Shown here: positions 2,538-55,153 of the stretch, piece after piece
Numbering within the stretch: the stretch's first letter is position 1
How the letters are laid out: every line of letters starts with the position of its first letter
Source of the DNA: Mytilus trossulus
Lineage: Eukaryota
Direction: 5' to 3'
DNA: 64,000 nucleotides
NCBI RefSeq assembly: GCF_036588685.1
Contig: NC_086376.1
Coordinates: forward strand, 9,982,001-10,046,000
Program-made: the position numbers and the translations under genes
Notes under the pieces: model-generated
What the model was told of the DNA's origin: nothing
Database searches by the model: none
What the model saw: the letters and a program-made list of their open reading frames with translations, nothing else

Positions 2538-2586
2538 TACTAATGAACTCAAAATCGTTAACTTTTTTGTTTATAAACTTTTTTAA

Positions 2587-3019: not shown

Positions 3020-3061
3020 TTAAATTCCTGCATTTGCACAGAAATCTACATGTACATTGTA

Positions 3062-8614: not shown

Positions 8615-9019
8615 CAAATAAATTTTCCAAACTTTTTTTCTTTATGCTTGATGGTAGTGATTTGATATTTGGTAAATTGTTTCATCATGACATGTTACAG
8701 ATTAAGTTCCAATTTTGTACTGGTCTGATGATTAAGTCCAGAGTTATGGTCCATATGTAAATGTTAGGGTACTTTGTTAAACCATATTTCTGTACAAAGG
8801 GAGATAAATCGTTTTTAAAAGATTTTTAAAAGACATTCTTTGGTAAATTGTTTAAAGAATTTTGTGCCAGGTTTGTTTGTTATTTTGTACAAACTATAAT
8901 TTTCTGAAAACTGAATAGTTTTATCATGACCAAGTTACAGATCACAATCAAATTTGTGTTTTGGTCTGATAATTTTGAGCTAAGTTCAAGAAGTTAAATT
9001 GACAAATTGAAAGAGTTGG

Positions 9020-9940: not shown

Positions 9941-10202
9941 GTCCTAGGACATAAAAAAGTCACTCATAAAATCAGATTTCCACACTGTTTTTAATCATGC
10001 TTGAAGATAGTGACTTGATATTTTCTTTTGGTTTCCACCATGACATGTTATATAACAAGTTAGCATTTTGTTCCAGTATAATGAATTTTTATCGAGAAGA
10101 GGATTAAGATTGCAATGTAATACCCTCAGAATGCTTATTGTAGTCTGACTTTGTTTTTACTACATTTCAGATCAGTGAGCAGGCAAAGAGATTTACCAGT
10201 TC

Positions 10203-11083
10203 ATGCTCACTGAAATAATGAGTAGTGAATCTGATGAAGGGGAGATTAAGACAGATCGAAGTGACAGCTCTGGAAGTGATGAAAATGATGGCACTCCTGA
10301 TCAATGGAGTGTACCTTCTATGTCTCAATCAATGCTGAACAGGTTTTCTAAGTTTCCAGATCATTCTACTAACTCTAAGCAGTTAAATAATTCAAAAGTA
10401 AACAAAGAATTCGTAAGCTCGTTAAGTAGAGTAAACTCTATTCCACCCCCTGTGCCCCCCAAAACTTTCAAACAGAAAAGAGATTCTTTTGAAAAACCAA
10501 TGGAAATGGAAGAGAAAGGTAACCTGGATGAAGTGGATCAGAACCAGCCATTTGAAGAGGGAAACAGTAATGATAAAAAGATGTCTGTAAAAGACAGGGC
10601 CAGAATGTTAGACCAGCAACAGGAATCAGACAGATCCCAATCAATGGAACATTCACCAGGTCCTAATCCATTTGAAGCACTCAAAAGACCAGCAGAATGT
10701 TCTCCTGACATAGAAGATCCATCTACAAAGCGGCTAGGTATCGTTACAGAAACAAATGTTGACACTGGTCAGGTTGAAACCAAATCTGACATAGAAGAAC
10801 CAATGCAAGAAGCTGAGATTCAAAGTCAAAGCCATAGTGATTGCACAGATCTAAGCACTAATGAACCATCAAACTTGCCAACAGATTCAGAACCAGTTAG
10901 TACTGGTATGTCTAACCTTGAACAGGATGGATCATCACCAAGGCAACATCAGGGACATACTGGACCAGATAGGTCATCACCACGGCAACACCAAGGTCAT
11001 CCTGAACCAAAAAGGTCATCTCCATGGCCACATCAACACCATCCTGATGCACAGTACCCTGGACCTAGATCAGCTCATGGATG
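10203..11083 (+). CDS. PARP14-like coding exon 1 (acidic/Ser-rich disordered N-terminus)
   Basis: Acceptor tttcag ends at 10170, ATG at 10203, 294-aa ORF, donor TG|gtaatt. Confidence 0.8.
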
Positions 11084-38000: not shown

Positions 38001-41000
38001 AACGAGTTGCGGAGGGTATAATCTTTTTCACCCGTCCATCCGTCTGTCAGTCCGTCTGTCCGTCAGTCCTGTTTCTTGTCATCGCAACTCCTCTCAAACC
38101 ACACAACAGAATTTCAAGAAACCTTTTCAGATAGTAAGGACATACTGTGTAGTTGTGCATATCGACGGGAAATTGCGATTCAATTTTTTTTCTAGGAGTT
38201 ACGCCCCTTTGAACTTATTTACTTTAATGTACTACTGCAACAGTTTGTCATCGCAACTCCTCTCAAACCACACAACAGAATTTCACGAAACCTTTTCAGA
38301 TAGTAAGGAAATACTATGTAGTTGTGCATATCGACGGGAAATTGTGATTCAATTTTTTTTCTAGGAGTTACGCCCCTTTGAACTTATTTACTATAATGTA
38401 CTACTGCAACAGTTTGTCATCGCAACTCCTCTCAAACCACACAACAGAATTTCACGAAACCTTTTCCGATAGTTAGGAAATACTATGTAGTTGTGCATAT
38501 CGACAGGAAATTGCGATTCAATTTTTTTTCTAGGAGTCACGCCCCTTTGAACTTATTTACTATAATGTACTACTGCAACAGTTTGTCATCGCAACTCCTC
38601 TCAAACCCCACAACAGAATTTCACGAAACCTTTTCAGATAATAAGGACATACTATGTAGTTGTGCATATCGACGGGAAATTGCGATTCAATTTTTTTTCT
38701 AGGAGTTACGCCCCTTTGAACTTATTTACTATAATGTACTACTGCAACAGTTTGTCATCGCAACTCCTCTCAAACCACACAACAGAATTTCACGAAACCT
38801 TTTCCAATAGTAAGGAAATACTATGTAGTTGTGCATATCGACAGGAAATTGCGATTCAATTTTTTTTCTAGGAGTCACGCCCCTTTGAACTTATTTACTA
38901 TAATGTACTACTGCAACAGTTTGTCATTGCAACTCCTCTGAAACCACACAACAGAATTTCACGAAACCTTTTCAGATAATAAGGACATACTATGTAGTTG
39001 TGCATATTGACGGGAAATTGCGATTCAATTTTTGTTCTAGGAGTTACGCCCCTTTGAACTTATTTACTATAATGTACTACTGCAACAGTTTGTCATCGCA
39101 ACTCCTCTCAAACCACACAACAGAACTTCACGAAACCTTTTCAGATAGTAAGGAAATACTATGTAGTTGTGCATATCGACGGGAAATTGTGATTCAATTT
39201 TTTTTCTAGGAGTTACGCCCCTTTGAACTTATTTACTATAATGTACTACTGCAACAGTTTGTCATCGCAACTCCTCTCAAACCACACAACAGAATTTCAC
39301 GAAACCTTTTCAGATAGTAAGGAAATACTATGTAGTTGTGCATATCGACGGGAAATTGCATTCAATTTTTTTTCTAGGAGTTACGCCCCTTTGAACTTAT
39401 TTACTATAATGTACTACTGCAACAGTTTGTCATCGCAACTCCTCTCAAACCACACAACAGAATTTCACGAAACCTTTTCAGATAGTAAGGAAATACTATA
39501 TAGTTGTGCATATCAACGGGAAATTGCGATTCAATTTTTTTTCTAGGAGTTACGCCCCTTTGAACTTATTTACTATAATGTACTACTGCAACAGTTTGTC
39601 ATCTCAACTCCTCTGAAACCACACAGCAGAGTTTACCACACAACAGAGTTTCATGAAATTTTGTAGATAATAAGGACATACTATTTAGATGTGCATATTG
39701 GCAGGAAATTATTTTTTCTTATACAATTTTTTTTTCTTTCACTTATCTAATTTCTCCAATGACAATGTGGGGACGTGGGGTATGTGAGTGTGCTCACTAA
39801 GGTTCTTTAATTTACTAAAGAATCGTGATCATATCATCAAGTATATGGGCAGAATATATCTATAAGACATACAATTACCACTCAAATCATACAATAACAA
39901 ACTAGGTATGCAACCATGTGCTTGTCAACAGGTGTTGAACATATACAAACACATGTGCTTCAGGTATGATATTATTATGCTGACAGTGGACCTTTTAAAG
40001 TAATTAATTCTTTCATTTTGAAAGAAATACACAAGACTAATGCAAAAGCATGATATATAAATATAAGAAAAAATGTAGGTTTGAATATTTATCTATTCTT
40101 TTTTTCACATATTTTGTAGATACTATAATGAACAAAAAAAGTGAGGGCACTATTACCAGATGAAATAAGTTCATGAAAAAACTGTAAAAGTTTTAAATAA
40201 CATCAATAAGACAAACACATTTTATTTTTCATTAAGGTTTCATTTTCTATCTATGTATAAGATATCAAGGTAAAATTGTGATGTGTATTACAATTGTTTG
40301 ATATTGTTCTTGAGCACGATTATCTGTATTGTTTTAAAATTATGAAAAGCCTAAGGCACCGAAACATGTCAATCTGACTTAAGCTGCTGCAGTAGCAATC
40401 ACAAAAGTTACATGTAATGTGTATTATCATCAAAGCCCTGTATACCTAATCTATTGAAGATTTACTAGTCTTTAGTTCACTCGTCTATGAAATTTTTATT
40501 TGTGAAATGATTTTCTTTGCAGGAGAAAGTGATACACAAGGTATTCCCTTCTAAAACATTTGTCTAATAAAAAAAGTCTATTGAATGTAGCTTCTGCTCA
40601 GCTTATTTCACTATTTAAATTGTTGAACCAATTTAATTTTAATATTAATATGTTCGTCAATATCGAGAAAAGTAAACAATTCTAATTATTTCTTTTTAAT
40701 TTACTTGCATATCTTTGATTGCTATTGTATGAAACTTTAAACAGATTAACAGAAGGAATTTGTAAATTGTTTGCAAGTTGTATGTTGCTGCCTCAAGCTG
40801 TGCAAATATAAAATCCTCCTTCCTAGCCAAAATTTCTCATAAAATAGATTTTAAAACTCATATACAACAGGGCAGTCAAAAATCATATAAAATTCAATAA
40901 AACCATAAGTACCACAAAAAAGCAACAAAAAGTCAATCAACAATAACAAAACACTGTACATAATAAACTTTTGATACAGAGAGATTTCTGGCCTGTTCAT

Positions 41001-44000
41001 CATTACTGATCAATGGAAAGTTGCAGGACAGTGAGTGACCTAGGGGACAATGCTGGATTTAGATTTGTATAATGATGTATGCTGATAAAATTGCTACTTT
41101 ATAGAAAATATTAATGATCATGACAAGTAATTCCTATTAAATCGACTTGGAAAAGAAAACTATGTGTTGCTTTCCAAGACTTTTGTTGCAGGCTAGACAA
41201 AAGCTAGATATTTACATTGTACAATTTTCTAACAAAATTGGGAGTGCAAATCTCAGGTTCAATAGTGACCCAGTAGTTCCTGCTCTAGCTAGGTTATGAT
41301 ATCCCCTGTCCTGTTAGTTATTGCAGGTAAAACTTAGGTTATAAGTCACACTCGTTTATATTACAATTGAGTTAAAACTTTGTGGTTATATGAGGGCATT
41401 CCGGTGCATACCCGTAGCCAGGGGGGGTTCGGGGGGTTTGGACGAACCCCCCCTTGAAAACAAATAAGCACTGTTAAAGTCAATGTTCTGTTCGAATTGT
41501 GACTGTTAAAGTCGAGTTTGTGAGTCAAACGAACCCCCCTTTGGAAATTCCTGGCTACAGGCCTGCGGTGTATTGCCATCACCTAGATTTCCATTACGTG
41601 ATATTCGTTTTGGGTTTTTAACCAATCTATAAACATGATGAATACTGAGACTTCATCAAGTGCAAACAAACGTTTCCTTTCGCTTGTTATAAATTCATTT
41701 CTTCAATGAAGACTCGTCAAATACTTTTTAAAGATGATATATTAATAATATTAAAATGTTTTGTTATATGTACATACATATAAGTGCAAAATCACTAATA
41801 TCTATGCTCACGCATGCGGAAGAATATCTCAAGAGCGTTTGTAATCTCAAGGAACAATAGCTCTGCATGGATGACTAAACATTTTTTGCTGAAAAATACG
41901 ACTGCCAACTTAAATCCATCCTATTAGTAAAAATTGAATTATCACAGAAGAGTGACGTGTCCACCATGTACTTGCACTGCACTATTATTGATATAGTAGA
42001 ATAGAATGATATACAAGTGCATGAAAATTAATTTAAAATTCAAAAAATTGTCCCTGGCACACAGCCTGGTATTAGTGATCATAACTATAATCATGATAAT
42101 AGTCATTTTTTACATCGATGTTCCATAAATGACATCACTTTATAAATATTTCAATAACAATTTATTCAATAACCTTAAAAGAACAATAGCTAATAATTAT
42201 ATCATTTATCAAATTCACTTTCTTATTTTATTCGAGTATACTACAAACATATAAATGAGACAATATCTGAAAAAGTCGATTTTCCATGTCCCCAACTTCA
42301 CCAGCAATTATTTTTTTATTCAACCATCTTTTTTGAAAATTTCAAGCTTCAGTATAAACTAAATTATATAATGCACCAACCCCTGACAATTAAACACTCA
42401 TTCTTATATTTCTTCCAATAAAATATTGTAATTTAAATGTTCAACCCCCCCTAAAATCATGTTGTCCCCTGTGTTTTTTGGAAAACTAAATCATTCAAAT
42501 AATATCCAAATTAATTCAACAGGCGTCCGATTCTCACATATATGATAAATTATATAATAAACTTGCCCTTAATTTGTCTTTTTATATTATAACTGTAGCA
42601 TGTAATAAAATTTTGCAAATTTTAAGAAAAAAACAAATTGTCCCCAGAGGTGATTTCCCTCCTGTTACCACTGAGTTTTTTTACCTGTGGAAACGTTTAC
42701 AAGACCAATAGTTATTTTCCCATTATGTATTGTGAAGAGCATCATTTCCTGAATGCATTAGTACAAAAAAATAGTTGAAAAGGCGGCCAGGTTTGAACAT
42801 TCAAGCCCATCCAAAGTAAGAATTTATAGAAAAATACTTATTGGTGTTCCATCCTGTTATACCGGTAGCCTTTTCTTCCACTTTCTGAGAATATTTTTAA
42901 GTGTGCACCACAATATTAAGTGTGTTTTTATATCATCTTTTTAAAAGTTATAGGACACAGGAAATACACTTACATTTAATGTGATAAAAAGGACAAAAAC
43001 TATCGCGTAATTCCTTTCTGTTACGTTCTGTCATGTTACCTGATTAAAAGTAACAGCATAACCATCATTAGTAACAGGAAGGATATTCAAGACATTTTCA
43101 CTGAAGAATCGAAGAGTTAATCTACTATATGTCAACCATTTCATTTAATATAAGTTATCACCACCATATCAAATAAATTTCAAAATAATATACAGTATAT
43201 TGAATAACAAAATAGTTTTTTTGCTTTTGATAACAGCAGAGAACATTGTGCAATTTAAGTAAAGTAGATGGTAACAGAAAGGAATTTATTTTAGAATTTT
43301 TCATTACCTAGGCAGATTTTTCATCTTGCAAATACAGTTTCAAAGACTAAATGACATTGTTTGCTGTTATCTTCCAATTGTGACCAATCTAAAATGATGT
43401 ATTTTTCTTAAACTTTAAAATAAAGCAGAAAAATCCTTTCTGTTACCAACTCTGTCCTGTTACCGTTGTCCTGTTACTCAAGATTCTTTCATGTTACCGA
43501 CATACCAAACTATATTTAAGTATATTTCTAAACCTTTTCTATTGCAAATGTTAAAATCAATAATTGGCATTTGATAAACTATTGCAGGATATACTAGCAA
43601 ACCACAAATAATGTCTTAAACTTATTCCTTATTCCCATTAGAAACTTTTTAAAATTGATTCCCTTTGGTAACAGGAAAGAACTGGATTTTTTTGTACCAT
43701 TTTTAAAATTGCCATTGTTTCCTTATTAAACAATTGTTTGAATTACAGACAACAGTTCCTAGATCCCAAATGTGTGTTCTTCGATTTGTGCTATTGAAAT
43801 ACAGGGTTTAAAGAATTTTTTGGGGGTTTTTTCTTATTGCCAAAAAATCGACTTTTTCAGATATTGTCTCAAATACAGATGTTAATAACAATGTTATTAA
43901 AGGTGTATTATTTATAGCAAAAATGCTGTGTCATTTTTATTATAATGTGCAGAAAACTAACAATTATATTTCGAAATACAAATACTTGAATCTGATTGAT

Positions 44001-47000
44001 CATTTCAAATAACATATTCTCATCATTTAAGCTTAAAATTAACTAGAGGAATGTAAAATATGCATGTTATAAAAAATATAATACAAAATGTACTAATAAA
44101 TTAATAATTGTAAAATTTAAAAATTAATTTGGTCAGTCATAATATTTTTACAAAAATTAATTAAAAATATACATAGCAAAATCATTTCTTAAAATACTGC
44201 AACAAATCTCATTCTTATTAAATCATTGGTGAATAAAATTGAGAATGGAAATGGGGAATGTGTTAAAGAGACAACAACCTACCATAGAGCAGACATTAGT
44301 CGAAGGCCACCAATGGGTCTTCAATGCAGCAAGAAACTCCCACACCCGGAGGTGTCCTTCAGCTGGCCCCTAAACAAATATGTATACTGGTTCAGTGATG
44401 ATGGACCTCATATACTAAACACTGAATTATACACAAGAAACTAAAATTAAAAATCATACAAAAATCATCATAAAGTATGTTTAAGGGAACAGTGGCAAAC
44501 CTAACTTCCAATTCCTCACAACATCTATGATCTATGAATAAAAATTTAATGTTGTCAAATTGTAGTAGACATGCCAATATAGAAAATCAGCTGTTTAGTG
44601 TTTCATAAAAATACAGTTGATTTTTATATGGTTTTACAAATACTATTAGTTACATGTGACCTTCTTTAATAACTATTTGGTTTAATAAATAGTATAAAGG
44701 GCGAGAGTGTAATATAATTCATATTAAACCCAATGTATGTTGATTTGAGAACAACACATATTTTTTAAAGAAACATAATTCTACTATTTACCATGTATTT
44801 AAATTAAAACAAGCCTACTGACATAAATAAACATGATTTCCAAGTGTTTTCTTTTAACCAATGATATTCTTAGAAGCGTTAAAGTGGTAAGATAACTTTT
44901 TTATAGTGTTTATCTGTATGTCATACACCTCCGTTTACCTGGTTCTTGTATGTGCTTAATGTTTCTAAACACTATATTTCTTCTTTGAAGCACTTATAAT
45001 ATAGGACTGAGTCCTGATGTTGACACATGTCATCCTTTACTCCTATAAGATATGCATTTTATAGTTAACGAAACTAGGTATTATAATACAACTCTGAAGT
45101 CTAATGACATTTTGCCCTGTGTAAGATAGCATCCTGTAAACAGATCTTCTATTGGTTATTCCACAAGAAAATTTAGCATTAACAAATGACTTTTTTAAAA
45201 TATTTTTTCTAAACTGCAATACAAAACATTTGACAACCAGCAAAGATTTGGGTATTATGAGATTTATTTCAATTCATGCAGTTTGCATAAAAAATGATTT
45301 TAGTTGTTTTTGTTAAATATAGGTGCAGCTAGTACAAGTGAAGAATCTATGGGACAAACCATAATGGAGGCACTTGTAGAATTTGTATCAGAGGGCCAGA
45401 AAAGTCTTCAGCATGTCTATCTAGTGATATTCCAGGATAAGATGGTTAAACCAATGTTGAAAGGAGTTCGTTCTGGTGGTCAGTCTGCATCTACAGGTAA
45501 ATATTAAATTAATTTGATCAGTTACATTATTTCTGTTGACAGAAGCAGGATATAGGTTAACTTTAAGACATAAAACAAAATAAAAATTCCAAAATATTCT
45601 ATCCAATCTATCATTCAAACTATCAAACTCCTTATTTCATGTATTTAGCACAAGCACTTCAAGTCTTGAGGTAAACTACAGAGTTTTAATAGTATCAATT
45701 GCACACTTAACCATACCCTTGAAAGACTGTCCATTCAATGTTTATTAATGAGTCTTGAGCAAAAACCAGATATACCAAACAGTGTGGTAAAGTAAAATGA
45801 CAAGATTTGCCATGATTCTAACATTTCCTATCGGTTTACTCAGCTAAGTCAGGACATTTTCCAAAGTCAGAAGACAAGAGAAGCAAGTCTGCAACATTTA
45901 TTTTCATTTTCTCTAGCTGATACAGGACATGTTAATACAATCAGTGACAATATAAGCATGTCTTATATTTACAATCTTTTTCTTGGAATAGACCCAGAGA
46001 GGTTATAAAGTCAAATGAGGAGAGGAGCTAGATGATAACATACATTATCTTTTTCTTCCAGCAAAACCAGGACAGGTTATTAAGGCAGACAACAAGAAAA
46101 GCACTGTAACATTTGCAATCTATGGTATCTCTCAGCGAGATATAAATAATGCGAAGGAGGGATTAAAAAGTGCAGTTAAAGAAAAATTTAAAACAGAAAA
46201 AATACCTGATAGATTGATTTCAGAAATTAATAAACATGAAGTAAGTAGACTTGAAAGTGTTTTTTAATATGCTATGCTGTAACTACTTGTCTGACTAGAT
46301 ACCTTAGATACCTAAAATAGAAATGTTCATTATCCTGTATATTGCCTCTTAAAATAGGAGAATTATTTTAAATATTTACTCAGTCTTTCACCAACATTGT
46401 GATTGCCCTTCATGTTATTATATTAACCCACGCAACAAAGTTGCGAAGAGTGTATTGTTTATTGTCTGTCCATCTGAGTTTTTATTCTAGAAGTTATGCC
46501 CTTTTAAACTTCTTTTCTTCAATATACTATACAGCAACAGTTTGTGATCGCAACTCTTCTGAAACCACATAACAGAACTTCATGAAACTTTATTTGTCCA
46601 GTGACAATTTGGGGGCTTGGAGTATGTTAGCATACTCACTAAGGTTCTTTAGTTTCTGAAATGTTCATGAAAAGTTTATCAATTGAAACACATGGTTCAG
46701 TGACTACTTGAAAAAAAAGTTAAAGATTTATAGTCTTCCAAATTTCTCTCTTATTACGAGCATTATGATAATAACTACATGTGTATTTGGTATGTGCATA
46801 GCATACCTTTCAAGGTGCGCATGCCTTTCAGACAGTCTTCACTTGGCCTCAATCTCATCTAATGGATTATTTTGCTGCACCTCTTCAGCCATTGTCTTAT
46901 GACTATATTGAGCATTCTTATTTCCTTTTTTTTTAACTTGACTTATCAGAAAAAGTGAATATACATACAACAACAATCCAATGAAATTTAAAGAACAGTG

Positions 47001-50000
47001 CTTTATTTTGAATATCTCAAATTTTTAAAGAATGAAAAAGGGTCAGACAGGTTTAATTGAGGCTTGTTTATTTTTTAGATAGACTATCTGAAAGACATAG
47101 AAAGTAATCTTCCTGTTCAGATGACAATCGACCAGGTGAATGGTAACGTCACACTTTATGGAATTCTAGATGATGTGATGAATGCCAAACAGGAGGTTTT
47201 TGATGCTCTAAGAAAGTTTGCTCACACCAGACATTGTAAAGCTGAGGCAGCAATTATTAAGGAACAAGTTCAATGGTACTTTAAGGTAAATTAGAAAGCA
47301 AAAAGAGAATCTCAATATGTTGTAAATTATTGGAAAAAAATGGCATTCAAGTAAAATGTGTGCAGGTCTATAATGTTATGGCGTCGTCCATAGACATTGT
47401 GTCTTGTTCTATACCACAACGTTCCGTAACACAAAAGTCCTTATTTTTAAATGAATTCAAATTAAGGTTTCAAAACAATCCTCTGTGATTTTATCAGAAA
47501 TTGAATAGCTGGGATTCTTTGATATGCAAATCTAACCCTGTATTTTATGCAGTTTCGTCACAACATTCCATACCACAAAAAGGCCTAATTTTTTAATGGA
47601 TTCAAATTGATGTTTCTAAACAATCCTTTATTTTGATTTCAACAAAAATTGAATTCCTGGAGCTCTTTGATATGCTAAATATAAACAGAAATTGATATTT
47701 TGTACAACTGCGAACAAATTTTGCGTCATATAATGCTTATGTCCAAAGACACATTTTGTTTCCGGTTAATAAGTTTAAGTGAATGGATCTCTGAGAAATT
47801 TTACCAGAAAATTAAATACAGACATGTGACAGAGATTTCAAGCAACAACTGGAGATTTGGAAATTTTTAGCTGGAGTTAGAGCCTCATAACTGGAGATTT
47901 TTTATTGACATTTTTATTGACGTACGCAATGATTTTTTTTGTTAATGATTCCATAACTCCATAGCCATTTTTAGTTGATAGAAATTTAAAATGAGGGGTT
48001 TTCAAATATTTATTTATTATATATATAGTTCAAGATAAAATGATCAGCCATCATATATAGTTGGTAAAAAGTATCTCTGATTTAGCTACATTGTCAATTT
48101 TGGTACCACTAATGAACGGTGGTGTTGAGTTGTGAGCATTCCGGTGGGTAGCCATATGTTAGGTCAAGTCATGAGGGTCACCATAGTCCGCTTTTCAACA
48201 AGTGTAGTAGGACTATGCATACTTATCATAATTGAGTTCATGGAGACATTTGGCTTTGAGGTTCAGTATTATAACTGTTCAATGTTTTCAACAGCATCAA
48301 ATCAAAGTTGTTGTTTATACAACTTAATCTTTTGTCAATATTTCACTTTTATTCATCCAGGGCTGAGGCATGTGTCTTAAACTTGCTAGTTGATCACCAG
48401 GTAATTGCCAATACTCTTTTATTGCTGTGTATACAGTCTAATCCTTAACACCTTCATAGACAACTCAAGGCTATTTACTTTTTGACACAAAAACAATTAC
48501 AGGACACTTCCATTTTTTTGGACTTTTCAAATATCAATTTCTAGTTTCTCTGACTTTTTCTCTGTCAGAATCAATTTTGTAAACATTTTTTTTTTCTAGG
48601 TTGACATTTTCAAAAAGCAGAAAATTTCAAATTTAAATGACAGGGACGGACAAGGGTCTCAAAAGCGGGAGATTTTGACTCCCACCGGAAGAATCACATG
48701 TATGTAAATACGTCAAAATGAAGGTTTGGGATTGATTAGTGGGGTTATGGTACCAATAGTTAAGGAATTAAGGGCAAAAAGGGGCAAAAACAAGCATTTT
48801 TGTAGTTTCTGGACAATTAACTTATTAGGTGTAGGTGTATGGATCTCTCTGAAATTTGTACCACAAGGTTTCATAACACAAAGGTTAGGCTTGGATTGAG
48901 TTTTAAGGTAATAGCCCCAAATGCTCAGGAATTAGGGGAAAAAAGGGTCCAAAACAAGCTTTTCTAGTTTCCAAACAATTACTCATGTATGGATCTCCCA
49001 AAAATTGTTTACCGGTACTTAGTTTCTTACCTCAAAGGGAAGGATAGGTTTGAGTTATGGGGTAATTACATACCTGTCAACCTGTGATGATGAAAATGCA
49101 GGTCATGACCTGCATTGAAGAATCAAATCTCAGGTCATAACGCGTACGAACTTTTTCAAGTAATTTCAGTATTTATGGTACATTTTTGTCCAGCCTTTGA
49201 ATTTAGTCGAATAAGCGAGACTAAGCGATCCCACATTCCGCCAGCGTCGGTGGCAGCGTCAACAAATATTCACTCTGTGGTTAAAGTTTTTGAAATTTTA
49301 ATAACTTTCTTAAACTATACTGGATTTCTACCAAACTTTGACAGAAGCTTGTTTATGATCATAAGATAGTATCCAGAAGTAAATTTTGTAAAAATAAAAT
49401 TCCATTTTTTCCGTATTTTACTATAAATGGACTTAGTTTTTTCTGCGGGGAAACAAAACATTCACTCTGTGATTAAAGTTTTTAGAATTTTAATAACTTT
49501 CTCAAACCATCCTGGGTTTGCACCAATCTTGCACAGAAGCTTGTTTATAATCATAAGAAAGTATCCATAAGTAAATTTTGTAAAAATAAAATTCCATTTT
49601 TTCCGTATTTTACTTATAAATGGACTTAGTTTTTTCTGCGGGGAAACATTACATTCACTCTGTGGTTAAAGTGCTAGAATTTTAATAACTTTCTTAAACT
49701 ATCCTGGGTTTGTACCAAACTTGGACAAAAGCTTGTTTATGATCATAAGATAGTATCCAGAAGTAAATTTTTCAAAAAAATAAATCCATTTTTTCCATAT
49801 TTTACTTTTAAATGGACTTAGTTTTTTCTGCGGGGAACCATTACATTCACTCTGTGGTTAAAGTTTTTAAAATTTTAATAACTTTCTTAAACTATCCTGG
49901 GTTTGTACAAAACTTCGACAGAAGCTTATTTATGATCATAAGATTGTATCCAGAAGTAAAGTTTGGAAAAAGATTACTCAGTTTTCTCTGTAATTTACTT

Positions 50001-53000
50001 TTAATGGACTTGGATTTTCTTACAATCATAAAATAGTAACAAGAGGAATATTTTTATTGATTTTTTTCCTCATTGTTGTTGAGCCTGCAATTTACAGCAA
50101 AAATAGGCGAGACACTGGGTTCTGCGGAACCCTTACAAATTTTCTTATAATGTATATCAAAGATACCAAAACATCAATACATGTTCACTTGGTTAAGTCA
50201 TTTTAAATCTTATTAATTATTATTTCATTGCACTTTTAAATTTTTTTATAAATTTGTGTAACACAGTCTTATGTTTTTCTGCCTTTTTGTCATCATCTTT
50301 TTGAAATACTAGAATTTATTTTTCATATGTAATTTTAAAATGTTTGAGACTACTGGCTATGTAGCTTTTAAAAATACCCTCATTTGATTGAGAAGGAAAT
50401 TAGACTATGATAAAATGAAGTAATCTATACTATTAAACGAGAAGACCTCATTTTGGGGGTCGCCTCTCTTCTTTCAACAATTAATTGATCAACAAGCCTC
50501 TGTGTCCTATAGGTACAGTGCATAGTGCCATTTGTCATCCATTCTTATGATTATTCAGATTAAGTTATTTTTGGAGAAAAACGAGAAAAAAGGCATCTGG
50601 ATATTGTCCCGTCATTGGACTAAATCTTAAGTCAGATTAGACTTCCGGTTTGCGTTTTTCTGTATACTTTGAACATGTATATACAAATAATAAAGTGTAT
50701 TTTCAGAATTCTATCTGCTATCATTTTCAAGTTTACTGTTCACGGCAGTCATAGAGTTTATTAAATAGAGAGAGTCAGTATACTATATCAATGACCACTA
50801 TGGATCGATTAGTAAACTTAGAATTAAAAGTAAATACACTGTATTTATATAGTAATGAATGTTCATAATATACAGATAAGCACTAAAAGTATTCATGTGA
50901 ACTTTTGATACCTTTTCTGAAATTCTCCAGTCATTAAATCTTTTACAAAATTCATTGATTACAAAAAAAAGAAGATGTGGTATGATTGCCATGTTGAGAC
51001 AACTCTCCACAAGAGACCAATATGACATAAATATTAACAATTATAGGTTACTGTACGACCTTTAACAACGAGCAAAGCCCATACCGCATTCTCAGCTTTA
51101 AAAGGCCCCGAACTGACAATGTGAAACAATTCAAACCAGAAAACTAGCGGCCTTATTTATGTACATAAAATGAACGAAAAACAAATATGTTACACATAAA
51201 CAAACAACAACCACTGAATTACAGGCTCCTTACTTGAATGTTCATAACATACTAAATGTATATTCATATTGAAATTGATAGAAAACCAAAAAAATGGGAA
51301 TATTGGATATAAAGGAGAAGGGATAAAAAAAAAAGCATTTTCCTGTCCCCAATAACATATGACTAATGATACTTTTGCTGAAATTCTCCAGTCATTCAAT
51401 ATTTTACAAAAAAATTCCGACAACACTTTACATACTTTAAACTACTCTCTGAATGCCCCCGATTTCGCCAGTGTGTTCTAGTACAGTTAAAGGAAGTATA
51501 AATGTAAAAAAATAATTTTCAACTTTTTTTTTTTAAATCGAATAAAGGTATAAAATAATAAAAATTTATTTTTCAATATGTATTTGAATTTTATATTTTT
51601 ATGATTTTATGTTTTTCACCCATAAAACGTAAATATAAGGAATAATTTTGAATGGTGACAAATAAGGGGAAGTAACTCTACTAAGTTAAAATATGTTTGT
51701 AAACCAATAGAGCAATTTATTTTAAACGACCTAAAGCTAAGGTAATTGGTGTTTATTAACAGTGTGTTTGACACCAAAGCTGTCAAATGAAGCCATGCAC
51801 TTAATGGGTCACTTAATTTGACAGTTTACATAGCTAGATGAACTTCCTGTTCATGGAAGAATTACGAATTTGCCGGTATTTCAAAGAAATATTACTTATG
51901 AAATCAATCTCAAGGCTAAGAAATACAGGAGAAATATGGTCATTTTTAGAATTCCCGCGGTTATTTCAATGACCCGGTTGGTGTCCTGGGTGATCCCTCA
52001 CAATTGTGAAAATCTCGGGTCACACCCGCAGAATACGGGTCAGTTGACAATGGTTGACAGGTATGAGTAATTACTCTAAAAAGAGTTTAAAAGGTTTAGA
52101 GGGATTTTTTTCAAATTTCAAATGATTGCACAGTATTCACCATTGGGCAATAGCAAGAAAACTTCAATTGCTAAGTATTGTGCAATAGAGCAGTGCAAGA
52201 TCAACATGTTTGAAAAGTTCAAGTAGATGAGATCACAATTTCATTTTTAACAATTTCATCTACTGAAAGCTTCCTGTAACAATCCTTTTTAAATGCTCAG
52301 TATATTTTTTTTGTTTTAGGATCTTAGTGACAAAGGACTGCCAGTACTTACTGAATACCCTGATGAGATAAACATGTATCTGGAGACTGGTTACAAAGGG
52401 GAGTCTGGACGGAAAGAGGTTGAATTCAAGGATGATCAGGGAGAGGAATATGTTATTGTGCTGAAAGATATGATGGAATATGTTAAAAATGATAGGAAAA
52501 ATAAAGTGGAAGTTTTGAGAAGAGAAAAAATACAAGGTAGACTTATCCTAGAAGTATAAGATAAAACATAAACAAATAAGTGTTGGTACAATTTAAAAAA
52601 GAAACAATCACAAATAGAACACAGAACACTAAAAAACATGCACAATCTCCTAAAAAGAAGTAATGCTATTTTCATGCCCAACCTACAGTAGTAGAAGGTC
52701 ATTATGTTTTCTTGTCTGCCGTCTTACCATTTGTCTGTCTGTCTGTGGGTCCATTTTGTCAGTTTGTCCCACTTCAGGTTAAAGTTTTTGGTCAAGGTAG
52801 TTTTTGATGAAGCTGAAGTCCAACCAACTTGAAACTTAGTACACATCTTCCTTATGATATGATCTTTCTAATTATAGAGCCAAATTAAACTTTTGACCCC
52901 AATTTCACGGTCCACTAAACATAGAAAATGAAAGTGGGAGTTTCAGTTTAAAGTTTTTGGTCAAGGAAGTTTTTGATGAAGTTGAAGTCCAATCAACTTG

Positions 53001-55153
53001 AAACTTAGTACACATGTTCCCTATTGTATAATCTTTCTAATTTTAATGCCAAATTAGATTTGTTACCTAATTTTATGGTCCATTGAACATGGAAAATGAT
53101 AGTGCGAGTGAGGCATCCGTGTACTTTGGACACATTCTTGTTTTCTATCAAGTGTCCTGATGATAAACAATCCTGAATTCCTGGACTTCAAAACATATAA
53201 ATCCTGTGTCTTGATTAAAATAAATCCTGATGATAATATAGCTCTTTCCATAAATCCTGAACTTAAAAATGATCAATCCCAGAATTCCTATAAAGGTCCA
53301 ACCCCCTCCCCTTTTTTAGATGGACATCCATCAGAATTTTATTGTGTGATATTTATATTTTCAGGGGATGGAGGAACTTTTGAGCCACCAGTTCATTGGG
53401 ATGATCAGGGATCAGAAAATGTGAAGCTAGTTACATTACTGCCAACATCCCCAGAATATACTAAATTAGAACAACAGTTTATTCAGTCTGTATTTAGTGG
53501 GAGATCAGAATGGGCAAACCAGTTCAATAAACAGTCACTTAAAGTTACAAAGGTATATATACTATATGTGAATTATCAGTTATCTACTAAGTCTTTTACT
53601 TACAATTTGCCTTGAAATCTCACTTGACGTCACTCCTAGATTAAACAAGAAACTTAAATTTCTTTATTTGATTATGCTTCGATCTCCTATACAAGGATTT
53701 GTATGCCACAGAATGCAATAAAATCACATTAAAAGAAAATTTGTAGGTAAAAGATGTTACTTTGATTCTGGATTTTTTATTGAAGAAATAACATGTCATT
53801 TCACTCAAAATATTGGATTCTGATATGATATCCACAGGCAGGTACACAGAGGATTTTAGAATTGTTGTCCTCCAATTACAACCGTTGAAACAAAATGATT
53901 CAGATTGCATTTTAATATGTTTATATTTAGCAAAATGTTTCTAGTAGAATCTCTCAAATAGATGATAAAATAATCACATATAAAAGTAAATAAATCAAAA
54001 ATTGTATTGACAGTCGTGACAGGTAAAATTACATTTAAAGAAATTCATTTGCATGGAGGCCTTTTTTTTTTTTTACTTTAACATTATATCATTTGAAACC
54101 TACAGATTGAGAGAATTCAGAATTTAAGTTTGTACCACATGTATGCAGCTAAGAAGGCTTTGATAGAAAAACAAAATCCACAAGGACATAAAAATGAGCA
54201 AGAATTATGGCATGGTACACCAGATAAAGCTATACTTAGTATTAATATGTATGGATTTAACAGGAGTTATTGCTCAGACAATAGCAGTAAGTAGAACAAA
54301 TTGTCAGTTATTTGTGACACAGAATATCCATAATTATGTCTTTTTTGTCCATTTGTTCATTCATCTGTCCTTCCTTTCATGCATTCCTCCTTCCATCTAT
54401 TCATCTGTCTGTCCCACTTCTGGTTAAAGTTTTTGGTCAAGGTATTTTTGATACAGTTGAAGTCCAACCAACTTGAAACATAGTACACAATTTCCTTATG
54501 ATGTGATCTTTCTAATTTTAATGCCTAATTAGAGTTTAGACCTCAATTTCATGGTCCACTGAACATAGAAAATTTGAATGTGAGTGGAGCATCCTTGTAC
54601 TATCGACACATTCTTGTTATTACATTAGTTGCAAATATATACAGTGCATGCAGATGCAAAACTTTGACATATTCAGTGTGAGAACATCATTTATATAGTG
54701 GAAAACAAAATATTCCTTATACAGCATAGATAAAATATTAGTTTCTGATAGTCAGTTGCAGTTTAACAAGTTTTAGATGCAAACAATATTTCATAAAATA
54801 AAAACTACCACCAAATTTCTTATACATTTCCCTTAACAAAATCATTTTTTTTTTTTACAGAGGATGCATATTGGGGTGATGGAGTATATTTCTCAGCAGA
54901 TGCCTCATATTCAGCTAGAAACTGGCTGGCTACAGGTACTGGCACTGGTGACCATAATATTTACCTGTGCAACGTGTTGACAGGTGTGCCTATTAAGGGA
55001 CAAAAAGGAATGCGTGTACTACCTACAAGACAAGATGGAACAATGTTAAACTATGACTCTGCAACAGATGCGAAATATAACCCAGTTGTAGAATATGTCA
55101 TATTTAATGACACACAAGCCTATCCACAGTACTGCATTAAATTTAAATATTAG
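10203..55153 (+). CDS. PARP14: PARP14-like macro-domain ADP-ribosyltransferase (IDR - RRM-like - KH-like - 3x macro - KH - WWE - PARP), 24 coding exons, about 2225 aa
   Basis: Hand-spliced join(10203-11083,13488-14164,14995-15035,16481-16649,18903-19124,19555-21165,21603-21697,22043-22264,22594-22797,24062-24116,33004-33095,33505-33756,35441-35662,36217-36355,36654-36761,37341-37409,37789-37968,45323-45496,46062-46240,47079-47285,52320-52536,53365-53552,54106-54286,54861-55153) = 6678 nt. All introns are GT-AG, phases match and there is no internal stop. Motifs: FPALGTG/IPAMGTG x3 (macro), VQWYF..EYP (WWE), IERIQN, LWHGT, GFNRSY, GVYFS, YDS, FNDTQAYP (PARP). The symbol means family-level likeness, not proven orthology. 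Confidence 0.9.
11493..11536 (+). ncRNA. Type I hammerhead ribozyme, GAAA box mutated
   Basis: CTGATGA-GTCT-tatgt-AGAC-GAGAA-gcgc-GTC-TGGCGT. Confidence 0.6.
11846..11890 (+). ncRNA. Type I hammerhead ribozyme, core intact
   Basis: GCGTCA-CTGATGA-GTCT ttatgt AGAC-GAAA-tgcac-GTC^TGGCGT; stems I and II pair, stem III is minimal. Confidence 0.8.
13488..14164 (+). CDS. coding exon 2 (P/G/Q/H/Y-rich low-complexity region)
   Basis: tttacag acceptor in phase with the previous exon (TG|G = W); donor GAAG|gtacaa. Confidence 0.82.
14995..15035 (+). CDS. coding exon 3 (GPKVEPKRPGSSKK)
   Basis: taag acceptor, AAG|gtaag donor; supplies the phase 1 to 0 change needed by the flanking exons. Confidence 0.75.
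16481..16649 (+). CDS. coding exon 4 (RRM-like)
   Basis: LCVSGIDKQQTNETFFNYME...HAVVVFED resembles PARP14/10-type RRMs; canonical splice sites. Confidence 0.8.
16712..17090 (-). repeat. Degenerate retrozyme-family copy
   Basis: TTGAAGAGCATTGAG, GGTAATCTATTCCTGGG and a CTCATCAG remnant match the same family. Confidence 0.55.
18903..19124 (+). CDS. coding exon 5 (RRM-like)
   Basis: tttag acceptor, TCAG|gtata donor, phase 1-1. Confidence 0.8.
19555..21165 (+). CDS. coding exon 6 (large exon, KH-like repeats)
   Basis: Lies inside the 601-aa ORF; GAITFTGVEEDISKAKVMI and SVKISGTPKVI are KH-like; PARP14 genes have a comparable large exon. Confidence 0.88.
21603..22797 (+). CDS. coding exons 7-9 (21603-21697, 22043-22264, 22594-22797): macro domain A
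   Basis: KEDLGKQK|ADVIICSTNGQLDLSGPAGKSMVNAAG...|...KSIVFPALGTGNLRYP. Confidence 0.88.
22881..23772. repeat. 30-bp minisatellite, about 30 copies
   Basis: (TGATTACCATTACATTCTAAGTATATTCTA)n, nearly perfect. Confidence 0.97.
24062..24116 (+). CDS. coding exon 10 (AFEQEELRQVNPGFQPQR)
   Basis: tttttag acceptor, G|gtaag donor, phase 0-1. Confidence 0.8.
25713..27700 (-). pseudogene. DIRS tyrosine recombinase, interrupted
   Basis: LTLK-like VTLKTVFLVAITTFRRCSDLQSL; resumes after the 26024-27024 insertion with KVNAHSTRAIAPSW...ADWAVESTFTKFYLRD*; frameshift near 25955. Confidence 0.88.
26024..27024. mobile_element. Non-autonomous TIR transposon nested in the DIRS YR gene
   Basis: Perfect 13-bp TIR CAGACCTGCCAAC and 6-bp TSD TTATCC. 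Confidence 0.88.
27533..30870 (-). pseudogene. DIRS RT / RNase H / N6-adenine methyltransferase-like ORF, disrupted
   Basis: DQWVLSIIEEGYKLEF; GFYSTLFLVPKK..RPVTNLK; IDLSNAYFH; CFGPTCAPRIF; VYLDDWL; TTDAS; EWSL..IDLFPS..DAL..W..YAYVFP. Contains frameshifts, a stop near 28910 and an insertion at 29387-30674. Confidence 0.9.
29387..30674. mobile_element. Non-autonomous TIR transposon nested in the DIRS RT gene
   Basis: CAGGGGCGTAGCT...AGCTATGCCCCTG termini; RT reading resumes on both sides (KNADIF / LAEINSLL); TSD not clearly resolved. Confidence 0.85.
30885..32454 (-). pseudogene. DIRS ORF1 (gag-like), split by a frameshift near 31860
   Basis: Overlapping ORFs 32454-31846 and 31868-30885 lie directly behind the 5' ITR and ahead of RT. 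Confidence 0.7.
33004..35662 (+). CDS. coding exons 11-13 (33004-33095, 33505-33756, 35441-35662): macro domain B
   Basis: VKVVKGDLGTQK|VDVLICAVPKDLNLESAGGAGKSL...|...KSIGIPAMGTGTIGYP. Confidence 0.88.
36217..36355 (+). CDS. coding exon 14 (linker AFYDEEKKR...)
   Basis: taccag acceptor, G|gtaag donor, phase 0-1. Confidence 0.8.
36654..45496 (+). CDS. coding exons 15-18 (36654-36761, 37341-37409, 37789-37968, 45323-45496): macro domain C
   Basis: LTVEKGDILSKKCGAIVNGTNHEFDLTK|GAVSQAL...|GCGLPCDHIIH...MAFPALGT|G...LQHVYLVIFQDKM resembles PARP14 macro3. Confidence 0.88.
37988..39810. repeat. HINE/Helentron-like element carrying about 9.5 copies of a 169-bp tandem repeat
   Basis: (CCGT/CTGT)n microsatellite at 38031-38065, 169-bp units at about 38079-39700, 3' hairpin GTGAGTGTGCTCAC; a shorter copy lies at about 46425-46650. 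Confidence 0.85.
41406..41567. mobile_element. Short TIR MITE
   Basis: CCCGTAGCCAGG...CCTGGCTACAGG termini with CGAACCCCCC subterminal repeats. Confidence 0.7.
42257..43870. mobile_element. Sola-like non-autonomous DNA transposon
   Basis: Perfect TIR GAGACAATATCTGAAAAAGTCGATTTT and 4-bp TSD AAAT; superfamily inferred from GAG termini and TSD length. Confidence 0.85.
44230..44460 (+). repeat. Dispersed SINE-like repeat (other copies at about 36084 and 36822)
   Basis: Shared AATAAAATTGAGAATGGAAATGGGGAATGTG..AAAGAGACAACAACC..CAGCTGGCCCCTAAACAAATAT. Confidence 0.65.
46062..47285 (+). CDS. coding exons 19-20 (46062-46240, 47079-47285): KH-like region and start of WWE
   Basis: TFAIYGISQRDINNAK...; NVTLYGILDDVMNAKQEV...EQVQWYFK. 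Confidence 0.85.
47819..48704. mobile_element. TIR element with 6-bp TSD
   Basis: CAGACATGTGA...TCACATGTATG; TSD TAAATA on both sides. Confidence 0.75.
49202..50143. repeat. HINE-like element with about 4 copies of a 192-bp tandem repeat
   Basis: ATTCACTCTGTGGTTAAAG recurs at about 49268, 49460, 49653 and 49844; 3' hairpin GGGTTC-tgcg-GAACCC. Confidence 0.75.
50424..51481 (+). mobile_element. Non-autonomous Helitron
   Basis: A|TCTATACTATTAAACGAG...GC-rich degenerate hairpin...GTGTTCTAG|T (TC...CTAG inserted between A and T). Confidence 0.65.
52320..52536 (+). CDS. coding exon 21 (WWE domain)
   Basis: EYPDEINMYLETGY...EYVIVLKDMMEY...VEVLRR. Confidence 0.85.
52671..53140. repeat. HINE-like dispersed repeat (other copies at about 15835-16170 and 54330-54618)
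   Basis: Shared TCAGGTTAAAGTTTTTGGTCAAGGTAG...CATCCGTGTACTT..GACACATTCTTG. Confidence 0.7.
53365..55153 (+). CDS. coding exons 22-24 (53365-53552, 54106-54286, 54861-55153): PARP catalytic domain
   Basis: PVHWDD...SPEY; IERIQN...ELWHGT...GFNRSYC; YWGDGVYFSADASYS...VLTG...YDSATD...VEYVIFNDTQAYPQYCIKFKY*. Confidence 0.93.

What the first reader, a model, noticed from the sequence alone, without database searches (positions are those of the whole stretch)
54106..55153. Macro-PARP with an H-Y-E catalytic triad: candidate poly(ADP-ribose)-forming PARP14-type enzyme
Seen: the spliced catalytic domain has His (LWHGT, codon 54211), Tyr (GVYFS, codon 54887) and Glu (NPVVEYVIFNDTQAYP, codon 55091). 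Established: this third position is Leu in vertebrate PARP14/15 and Ile in PARP10/12, which are mono-ADP-ribosyltransferases, whereas it is the chain-elongation Glu (E988, NEYIVY) in PARP1 and is also Glu in tankyrases. The D-loop (GFNRSYCSDNSKDAYWG) appears about 2 residues longer than in PARP14. Inference: this invertebrate macro/WWE PARP may have kept or regained polymerase chemistry. Caveat: PARP3 and PARP4 have H-Y-E yet are mono-transferases.
Basis: partly seen in the sequence, partly recalled or inferred. Interest (0 to 1): 0.8.

Follow-up and report, generated by a model that had tools for sequence, protein, structure and literature searches.

The report
Mussel PARP14-like enzyme with catalytic glutamate
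The last exons of a mussel PARP14-like gene encode an ADP-ribosyltransferase that carries the catalytic glutamate that relatives in other animals lack; every member seen of a bivalve-only subfamily keeps it, so it is probably functional, but nothing here shows that the enzyme makes poly(ADP-ribose).

Summary
Window 54106-54286 and 54861-55153 (+) are the last two coding exons of a roughly 45 kb PARP14-like gene. RNA contigs from two studies show the GT..AG junction. His (54211), Tyr (54887) and Glu (55091, GAA) are present, and DNA and RNA contigs show no variant at the Glu codon.

The Glu aligns without gaps with the tankyrase catalytic Glu. By the C-terminal offset of structural alignments it falls on PARP1 E988 and PARP10 I987.

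It is not a one-off. All 26 long members of a bivalve-only, monophyletic subfamily carry Glu (Mytilus, oysters, scallops, unionids, clams). The 125 other long PARP14-like proteins have Met, Ile, Val, Leu, Thr or Ala. The subfamily also shares a Trp-Leu/Val in place of the Thr-Tyr that holds the nicotinamide-stacking tyrosine, a Trp just before the Gly-x-Gly-Val-Tyr-Phe motif at the end of the D-loop, and an insertion of about 10 residues.

The fold is still closest to the mono-transferases PARP15 and PARP10. Published Ile-to-Glu mutants of PARP10 and TiPARP do not make polymer.

The best reading is a transferase that uses its own Glu for catalysis, with a product that is probably mono-ADP-ribose. 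Polymerase activity remains an open minority possibility (about 0.2). An identical catalytic domain is already annotated in Mytilus trossulus as "PARP14-like". I found no paper that mentions this Glu. I did not find the same feature noted on other DNA in the scan's earlier findings.

The parts
10203..55153 (+). Whole PARP14-like gene, about 45 kb and at least 19 coding exons. It is the orthologue of Mytilus trossulus 'protein mono-ADP-ribosyltransferase PARP14-like isoform X2' (P0162, 2225 aa).
   Evidence: tblastn of P0162 gives collinear exon hits from 10203 to 55150 with 2090 of 2141 aligned residues identical. It is also collinear with M. edulis P0005.
22043..36763 (+). Exons that align to the part of P0162 (about residues 1233-1664) holding the three Pfam Macro stretches: 22043-22282, 22591-22797, 33505-33756, 35438-35668, 36217-36354 and 36653-36763. 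A long intron separates them.
   Evidence: tblastn. Pfam PF01661 finds 3 stretches on P0162, E = 4.6e-33.
47082..47285 (+). Exon with a weak PARP14-type KH-like match.
   Evidence: PF23249 at 20.3 bits and PF23254 at 16.2 bits, both below the curated cut-offs.
52320..52536 (+). WWE-like exon directly upstream of the catalytic domain.
   Evidence: PF02825 WWE at 18.8 bits against a 21.1-bit cut-off. It aligns to the WWE of paralogue P0005, which scores 27.7 bits. Splice sites were read.
53365..53552 (+). First exon of the ART (catalytic) domain. It contains the insertion of about 10 residues (SGRSEWANQFNKQS) that is specific to the Glu subfamily.
   Evidence: The translation is an exact substring of P0162 at 2007. 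The insertion is present in the Glu subfamily and absent in about 120 of 125 other sequences. Splice sites were read.
54106..54286 (+). Second ART exon. It holds the triad His (54211-54213, in LWHGT) and the start of the D-loop (GFNRSYCSDNS).
54287..54860 (+). Intron (GTAAGT...AG) holding a very high-copy repeat at about 54370-54650.
   Evidence: The joint 54286>54861 is seen in RNA contigs of 2 studies. Summed contig depth over 54370-54650 is 1e5-1e6 in the DNA runs and about 200-13,000 in the RNA runs.
54861..55153 (+). Last ART exon. It holds the D-loop Trp (54872-54874), the triad Tyr (54887-54889, in GVYF), the subfamily-specific Trp-Leu (54923-54928), the triad Glu (55091-55093, GAA, in VVEYVIF) and the stop codon (55151-55153).

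Best explanation
The finding covers the last two coding exons of an expressed mussel gene (Mytilus, catalytic domain identical to M. trossulus). The gene encodes a protein of about 2,225 residues of the PARP14 type: a long N-terminal region, three macro domains, KH-like and WWE-like modules, and a C-terminal ADP-ribosyltransferase (ART) domain.

Unlike every previously characterised animal PARP14, PARP15 or PARP10-type enzyme, this ART domain has a complete His-Tyr-Glu triad. The Glu belongs to a bivalve-specific subfamily in which it never varies. It is accompanied by other conserved changes around the NAD+ pocket.

My reading is that the Glu acts as the enzyme's own catalytic carboxylate, as in diphtheria toxin and PARP1-4, stabilising the oxocarbenium transition state. 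That would free the enzyme from the substrate-assisted catalysis proposed for H-Y-Ile/Leu enzymes, and so probably change which acceptors it can modify.

Because the scaffold is otherwise a compact PARP15/PARP10-like fold, the product is most likely mono-ADP-ribose, or at most short oligomers. By analogy with PARP14 and with the large number of paralogues in mussels, the biological role is probably stress or antiviral signalling.

Shown: gene structure, expression, triad, structural position of the Glu, conservation, and the co-varying residues. Inferred: the catalytic role of the Glu, the product, and the biological role.
For: Gene and splicing.

Domains: PF00644 on both exons. Macro, KH and PARP domains on the identical public protein P0162.

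Glu position: ungapped alignment to the tankyrase-2 catalytic Glu. First residue of strand 197-200 in the AlphaFold2 model, pLDDT 91.8. C-terminal offsets put it on PARP1 988, PARP10 987 and TNKS1 1291.

Conservation: Glu in 26 of 26 long subfamily members against 0 of 125 other PARP14-like proteins. The subfamily is one side of a branch with SH-aLRT 99 and 94. It spans Pteriomorphia, Palaeoheterodonta and Heterodonta.

Co-varying residues:
- Trp/Tyr then Leu/Val at +12/+13 after the triad Tyr, in place of Thr then Tyr. Tyr at +13 is present in 114 of 125 other sequences.
- Trp before GxGVYF in 20 of 26.
- An N-terminal insertion.
- Leu in place of Pro in MRVLP.
The Tyr at +13 corresponds to the stacking Tyr1646 of PARP14 (Tyr1633 +13; PMC9189837).

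Constraint on this copy: dN/dS is about 0.3 between the window's last exon and its inverted duplicate.

Glu as a transition-state stabiliser, and substrate-assisted catalysis in H-Y-Phi enzymes: PMC9189837.

Mono rather than poly: the closest folds are PARP15 and PARP10. TiPARP I631E stays a mono-transferase, and that paper cites PARP10 I987E as losing activity without making polymer (PMC3562000).
Against: There is no biochemical evidence of any kind. The role of the Glu is inferred only from position and conservation.

The second nicotinamide-stacking Tyr is replaced in this subfamily. That could instead mean altered or weakened NAD+ binding.

Artificial Glu mutants of PARP10 lost activity, so a Glu in this scaffold is not automatically productive. 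However, the natural subfamily has additional compensating changes that the point mutants lack.

The immune role is pure analogy.

Polymer formation is not excluded. Tankyrases also lack the helical regulatory domain, and they share the local motif EYVI[FY]..QAYP[EQ]Y.
Confidence: 0.55

Rival explanations
1. The enzyme is a true oligo- or poly(ADP-ribose) polymerase. The Glu restores chain elongation, as E988 does in PARP1. The macro and WWE-like modules in the same chain read the product.
For: The H-Y-E triad is complete and the Glu is at the E988 position. The Glu is strictly conserved together with remodelled residues at the end of the D-loop and at the nicotinamide site. These are features that the failed single-site mutants of PARP10 and TiPARP lacked. 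The D-loop is 2 residues longer than in most relatives. The local motif is nearly identical to that of tankyrase, a polymerase without a helical regulatory domain.
Against: The overall fold is nearest to mono-transferases: PARP15 Z 25.8 and PARP10 Z 24.6, against TNKS2 Z 20.7 and PARP1 Z 17.3. The Tyr-to-Glu spacing of 68 residues is the same as in H-Y-Met relatives, so no enlarged acceptor-side loop is seen. H-Y-E is not sufficient, as PARP3 and PARP4 show. No SAM, WGR or HD domain is found.
Confidence: 0.2
2. The Glu has no catalytic consequence, or the domain is a poorly active or inactive pseudo-enzyme. The protein would then work like ordinary PARP14, mainly through its macro and KH modules, or as a plain mono-transferase.
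For: The stacking Tyr at +13 is lost. Pseudo-PARP domains are common; TASOR, RCD1 and PARP13 appear among the structural neighbours. A paralogue in the same gene cluster has Gln and a degraded SYS motif, which shows that the family tolerates decay.
Against: His, Gly, Tyr, the Ser of the SYS motif and Glu are all intact in 26 of 26 members across the major bivalve groups sampled. Such invariance is not expected for a neutral site: the residue just before the Glu varies freely (Met 8 and Leu 7 of 26). dN/dS is about 0.3. The gene is transcribed and correctly spliced.
Confidence: 0.15
3. The Glu turns the domain mainly into an NAD+-consuming hydrolase, or into a transferase for non-protein acceptors such as RNA or DNA ends or small molecules.
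For: An enzyme-borne carboxylate makes NAD+ activation independent of an acidic protein acceptor (mechanism reviewed in PMC9189837). KH-like and RRM-type nucleic-acid-binding modules occur in the subfamily.
Against: There is no direct evidence. This reading overlaps with the best explanation and differs only in the acceptor.
Confidence: 0.1

Closest known systems
Human PARP14 / PARP15 (ARTD8 / ARTD7), macro-domain mono-ADP-ribosyltransferases, triad H-Y-L
   Same: The domain order is macro domains, KH-like and WWE-like modules, then a C-terminal ART domain. They are the best sequence matches and the best structural matches: PARP15 Z 25.8, rmsd 2.1 A over 188 residues. The GFNRSY, GxGVYF, SYS and QAYPEY motifs are shared.
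   Different: The third triad residue is Glu, not Leu or Met. Trp-Leu replaces the Thr-Tyr that holds the stacking Tyr (Tyr1646 in PARP14). There is a Trp just before the GxGVYF motif, a D-loop 2 residues longer, and an insertion of about 10 residues before the IERIQN strand. The N-terminal half is only weakly similar.
Human PARP10 (H-Y-I) and TiPARP/PARP7 (H-Y-I)
   Same: The compact clade-3 ART fold is the same: PARP10 Z 24.6. The window's Glu is at the position of PARP10 I987.
   Different: Those enzymes lack the Glu and are thought to use substrate-assisted catalysis. Engineered I987E and I631E did not make polymer. Here the Glu is natural, ancient and accompanied by further pocket changes.
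Tankyrase 1/2 (H-Y-E poly-ARTs)
   Same: They have the H-Y-E triad and a nearly identical C-terminal motif around the Glu (VVEYVIFNDTQAYPQY against [16 protein letters not shown]). They also lack a helical regulatory domain.
   Different: Structural similarity is lower: Z 20.7 with rmsd 3.7 A. No ankyrin or SAM domains are present. The loop between the Tyr and the Glu is shorter here.
PARP3 / PARP4 (H-Y-E mono-ARTs)
   Same: They are a precedent for H-Y-E enzymes that stop at mono-ADP-ribose.
   Different: They belong to the PARP1 clade, with HD and WGR or BRCT domains, and their structural similarity is lower: Z 16-17.

Membership tests
PARP14-like macro-PARP (clade 3 of the PARP family) | C-terminal PARP catalytic domain (PF00644) most similar to PARP14, PARP15 and PARP10 | tested here: met
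   The Pfam hit is found on both exons. The PDB sequence search ranks PARP15, PARP14 and PARP10 first. Foldseek and VIA-align rank PARP15, PARP14 and PARP10 first.
PARP14-like macro-PARP (clade 3 of the PARP family) | One or more macro domains N-terminal to the catalytic domain in the same protein | tested here: met
   The window exons between 22043 and 36763 align to the part of P0162 that holds the three Pfam Macro stretches. PF01661 finds 3 stretches on the public protein P0162, whose catalytic domain is identical to the window's.
PARP14-like macro-PARP (clade 3 of the PARP family) | WWE domain and PARP14-type KH domains before the catalytic domain | tested here: inconclusive
   WWE scores 18.8 bits against a 21.1-bit cut-off. 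KH_PARP14_3 scores 20.3-28 bits against a 28-bit cut-off. Paralogue P0005 passes the WWE cut-off.
PARP14-like macro-PARP (clade 3 of the PARP family) | Third triad residue hydrophobic (H-Y-Phi), the hallmark of clade-3 mono-ARTs | tested here: not met
   The residue is Glu (GAA at 55091), confirmed by reads and by alignments. Citarelli et al. 2010 found Glu in only one clade-3 protein, from Tetrahymena (PMC2964712).
Poly(ADP-ribose)-forming PARPs (PARP1/2, tankyrases) | Complete H-Y-E triad with the Glu at the E988 position | tested here: met
Poly(ADP-ribose)-forming PARPs (PARP1/2, tankyrases) | Catalytic fold and accessory domains of a poly-ART (HD/WGR as in PARP1/2, or SAM/ankyrin as in tankyrase) | tested here: not met
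   The nearest folds are mono-ARTs, with TNKS2 at Z 20.7 and PARP1 at Z 17.3. Pfam finds no HD, WGR, SAM or ankyrin domain.
Poly(ADP-ribose)-forming PARPs (PARP1/2, tankyrases) | Makes ribose-ribose linked chains | not testable with these tools
   This needs an enzyme assay.

The most novel reading that the evidence does not exclude
Bivalves carry a third, independently arisen lineage of poly- or oligo-(ADP-ribose) writers. It would be built on the PARP14 mono-transferase scaffold by re-acquiring the catalytic Glu together with compensating changes in the pocket, and it would be fused in one chain to macro and WWE-like readers of its own product. That would be a natural example of what the I987E and I631E point mutants failed to achieve.
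Probability: 0.18. Interest if true: 0.85.

Novelty: new variant of a known kind. Interest (0 to 1): 0.55.

Why it matters
Work on ADP-ribosylation treats the loss of the triad Glu as the defining step that turned clade-3 PARPs (PARP7, PARP10-12, PARP14 and PARP15) into mono-transferases that use substrate-assisted catalysis. The one broad survey that tabulated this residue found no animal clade-3 protein with Glu (PMC2964712).

This finding is an old, strictly conserved animal subfamily that has the Glu on a PARP14 scaffold, together with co-evolved pocket changes. It is therefore a ready-made natural experiment on three questions:
- What the Glu does.
- What else is needed for chain elongation.
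- How acceptor choice is set.

It also suggests that automated names such as "mono-ADP-ribosyltransferase PARP14-like" may misdescribe these bivalve genes. If the enzyme is only a mono-transferase, the finding is a modest addition to PARP family evolution. If it elongates chains, it would be a new class of PAR writer.

Tried and rejected
1. HMMER's pairwise alignment to PARP15 put the Glu opposite a gap, which raised the possibility that the Glu is an inserted residue. I rejected this. An ungapped 22-residue alignment to 150 relatives, the alignment to tankyrase and the C-terminal structural offsets all place it at the triad position. The extra residue lies in the loop before it: NPVVE in this paralogue against NPxE in the others.

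2. Assembly error at GAA was rejected on the DNA and RNA contigs.

3. A lone lineage-specific substitution was rejected by the survey.

4. I tried to decide whether the Glu was retained from the ancestor or regained. In a tree rooted with WWE-PARP-type outgroups, the Glu clade is nested among lophotrochozoan and lancelet Met/Ile/Val sequences (support 91). However, the AU test does not reject a basal position (p = 0.45). The 'careful' tree search did not finish in time, so quick trees were used. The question is unresolved. The taxon distribution, with Glu in bivalves and salmonid PARP15-like proteins among the animal clade-3 sequences seen here and in no animal clade-3 protein of Citarelli 2010, favours a regain.

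5. The Pomacea Gln protein might have been a gastropod member of the Glu clade. It groups instead with Pomacea and Littorina Met proteins.

6. Literature searches for bivalve PARP14, H-Y-E in invertebrates and PARP14-like triads found no description of this subfamily.

7. Residue-level 3D superposition could not be done because model coordinates are not exposed. Only aligned ranges were available.

All searches with window sequence were made exon by exon. Whole-domain work used public proteins returned by the tools. The AlphaFold2 input was an unchanged C-terminal stretch of P0162, which one search shows to contain the window's exon translations exactly.

Full report
**What is in the sequence.**
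- The window is AT-rich eukaryotic DNA.
- Positions 54106-54286 and 54861-55153 on the + strand are two exons separated by a GTAAGT...AG intron.
- The first exon translates to IERIQNLSLYHMYAAKKALIEKQNPQGHKNEQELWHGTPDKAILSINMYGFNRSYCSDNS.
- The second exon translates to (K)DAYWGDGVYFSADASYSARNW...KYNPVVEYVIFNDTQAYPQYCIKFKY followed by a stop.
- Both exons match Pfam PF00644, the PARP catalytic domain.
- Their best solved relatives are PARP15, PARP14 and PARP10.

**Reads.**
- The stretch is held by DNA and RNA runs of several studies.
- When four runs were laid on the stretch, the RNA contigs of two different studies skip exactly 54287-54860 (GT..AG), so the gene is transcribed and spliced as modelled.
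- An RNA contig covers 54937-55207 without a single difference. None of the listed differences in any run touches 55091-55093. The GAA codon is therefore not an assembly error.
- The intron carries a very high-copy repeat at about 54370-54650.

**The gene.**
- tblastn of related full-length proteins shows one collinear gene from 10203 to 55153.
- The public Mytilus trossulus protein "protein mono-ADP-ribosyltransferase PARP14-like isoform X2" (P0162, 2225 aa) matches with 2090 of 2141 aligned residues identical.
- The translations of the last four exons (52320-52535, 53367-53552, 54106-54285, 54863-55150) are exact substrings of P0162.
- Pfam on P0162 finds three macro stretches, weak PARP14-type KH matches and the C-terminal PARP domain.
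- The exon just upstream of the catalytic domain is WWE-like but scores just under the cut-off.
- The catalytic domain spans three exons: 53365-53552, 54106-54286 and 54861-55153. Splice sites were read.
Window sequence was searched exon by exon, and whole-domain analyses used public proteins returned by the tools.

**Is the Glu at the catalytic position?**
- HMMER's alignment to PARP15 put a gap next to the Glu, so I checked this in three ways.
- First, the 25 C-terminal residues align without gaps to tankyrase-2: VVEYVIFNDTQAYPQYCIKF against [20 protein letters not shown], Glu on Glu.
- Second, an AlphaFold2 model of the C-terminal 216 residues of P0162 has mean pLDDT 91.8 and pTM 0.89. In it His95 and Tyr129 lie in strands 90-97 and 128-131, and Glu197 is the first residue of strand 197-200.
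- Third, structural alignments of the model end at residue 216 opposite PARP1 1007, PARP10 1006, TNKS1 1310 and TNKS2 1157. Counting back 19 residues gives PARP1 988, PARP10 987, TNKS1 1291 and TNKS2 1138. E988 and I987 are the triad residues named in PMC3562000. This assumes no gap in the last 19 residues, which fits the ungapped sequence alignment.
- Coordinates are not exposed, so I could not make an atom-level superposition.

**How common is the Glu?**
- A search of 1.84 billion cluster representatives with the last exon gave 1340 hits. Among the best 150, the third triad residue is Met 69, Ile 37, Glu 20, Val 9, Leu 8, Gln 3 and others 4.
- A word search with the catalytic region of the M. 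edulis paralogue P0005 returned named full-length proteins.
- Every sequence with Glu in that list is from a bivalve. The taxa are Mytilus (two paralogue groups), Ostrea, Saccostrea, Pinctada, Argopecten, Mizuhopecten, Tegillarca, Potamilus, Sinanodonta, Mactra, Mya, Ruditapes and Mercenaria.
- Gastropods, a chiton, a brachiopod, lancelets, the lamprey and jawed vertebrates have Met, Ile, Val, Leu or Thr. Pomacea also has a Gln copy.
- In trees of the catalytic domain the Glu sequences form one group, with SH-aLRT 99 for 20 sequences and 94 in a smaller rooted set. Inside that group the branching roughly follows bivalve systematics, with Pteriomorphia on one side and Palaeoheterodonta plus Heterodonta on the other.
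- The Glu-bearing gene was therefore probably present in an early bivalve and has kept its Glu in all 26 long members seen.
- In the window's own genome, 27 clade-3-type last exons were found. Three have Glu: the window's gene, an inverted duplicate 78 kb away, and paralogue A 46 kb away. One has Gln, 268 kb away. The other 23 have Met or Ile. The four Glu and Gln copies form one cluster on contig C4.
- dN/dS between the window's last exon and its duplicate is about 0.3. This is a rough figure from 96 codons.

**More than a single substitution.** I compared 26 Glu sequences with 125 other long PARP14-like proteins column by column. The subfamily shows further conserved differences:
- The residues 12 and 13 positions after the triad Tyr are Trp (21, or Tyr 5) then Leu/Val. 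In the others they are Thr then Tyr, with Tyr in 114 of 125.
- In PARP14 numbering the triad Tyr is 1633, the conserved Ser is 1641 (+8) and the second stacking Tyr is 1646 (+13) (PMC9189837). The subfamily has therefore replaced the second nicotinamide-stacking tyrosine and placed an aromatic residue one position earlier.
- Trp precedes the GxGVYF motif in 20 of 26, against Ala, Val or Leu in the others. In the window's paralogue the Trp is shifted by one position: AYWGDG.
- An insertion of about 10 residues lies before the KIERIQN strand and is absent in about 120 of 125 others.
- MRVLP replaces MRVPP.
It is found in only part of the subfamily.
- In the model, the insertion, the D-loop and the Trp-Leu loop are the least confident parts, with pLDDT 75-78.

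**What it most likely does.**
- Reviews state that the triad Glu stabilises the oxocarbenium transition state and is needed for elongation. They also state that H-Y-Phi enzymes such as PARP10 borrow a substrate carboxylate instead (PMC9189837).
- An invariant Glu at this position, with co-evolved neighbours, is best explained as a working catalytic carboxylate.
- Polymer formation does not follow from that:
  - PARP3 and PARP4 are H-Y-E yet mono-transferases.
  - TiPARP I631E stays a mono-transferase, and that paper cites PARP10 I987E as losing activity without making polymer (PMC3562000).
  - The model is closest to PARP15 (Z 25.8, rmsd 2.1 A) and PARP10 (Z 24.6). Tankyrase-2 scores 20.7 and PARP1 scores 17.3 (Foldseek agrees).
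  - The Tyr-to-Glu spacing of 68 residues equals that of the H-Y-Met relatives.
  - No helical regulatory, WGR or SAM domain is present.
- I therefore favour a Glu-dependent transferase whose product is mono-ADP-ribose or short oligomers (0.55).
- A true polymerase is a minority reading (about 0.2).
- The remainder is split between a neutral or inactive domain and an NADase or nucleic-acid transferase.

**Retained or regained?**
- Citarelli et al. 2010 found Glu in only one clade-3 protein, from Tetrahymena, and in no animal one (PMC2964712).
- With WWE-PARP-type outgroups, the Glu clade nests among lophotrochozoan and lancelet Met/Ile/Val sequences (support 91). The AU test does not reject a basal placement (p = 0.45).
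- The taxon distribution makes a regain after a duplication in early bivalves the more economical reading, roughly 2:1 by my judgement. This is not settled.
- Met (ATG) or Ile (ATA) to Glu (GAR) needs two steps through Val, and Val is seen in lancelets and the lamprey.

**Novelty.**
- The gene is already predicted in public annotation under a homology-derived name.
- No paper in the searchable library mentions a Glu-bearing PARP14-like subfamily in bivalves.
- It is a new variant of a known kind, not a new kind of system.
- A second, independent case turned up in passing: short salmonid "PARP15-like" proteins also have Glu at this site. The reversal may therefore be recurrent.

Noticed in passing
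window 54370-54650 (inside the intron 54287-54860): This is a very high-copy repeat. Summed contig depth is 1e5-1e6 in two DNA runs, and it is also present in RNA runs, with many internal joints and loose ends. It is probably a SINE- or MITE-like element.
   Followed up: no
G000 contig C4 10.03-10.31 Mb (loci L001-L004): Four related last exons form one cluster. They are the window's gene (Glu, GAA), an inverted duplicate 78 kb downstream (89% identical, Glu, GAA; dN/dS about 0.3), paralogue A 46 kb downstream (Glu, GAG), and a copy 268 kb downstream with Gln (CAG) and a degraded SYS motif.
   Followed up: partly
Proteins P0036, P0056, P0058 (Oncorhynchus, Salvelinus, Salmo 'PARP15-like', 245-335 aa): These short salmonid clade-3 PARPs also carry Glu at the third triad position (DPTEFVVF). 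They have an extra N-terminal region, no macro-domain-sized segment in the 245-335 aa proteins (not Pfam-scanned), and Phe in place of the second stacking Tyr. This looks like an independent second occurrence of H-Y-E in clade 3.
   Followed up: partly
window 26880-29384 (- strand), inside the long intron 22798-33504: An 834-aa open reading frame on the opposite strand has no Pfam hit. Further ORFs lie at 30885-32454 on the same strand. GC content is locally higher (0.36-0.38). This is possibly a mobile element.
   Followed up: partly
Proteins (vertebrate PARP14): The third triad residue of PARP14 is Met in fish, frogs and birds, and Val in the lamprey, one frog and a lizard. The only rodent sequence in the set had Leu. 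'H-Y-L' therefore does not hold for PARP14 across the vertebrates sampled.
   Followed up: no
window 10203-14166: The first two coding exons encode a Pro/Gln/Gly/His-rich low-complexity N-terminus of about 520 residues with no Pfam domain. PARP14 of vertebrates has no counterpart annotated here.
   Followed up: no
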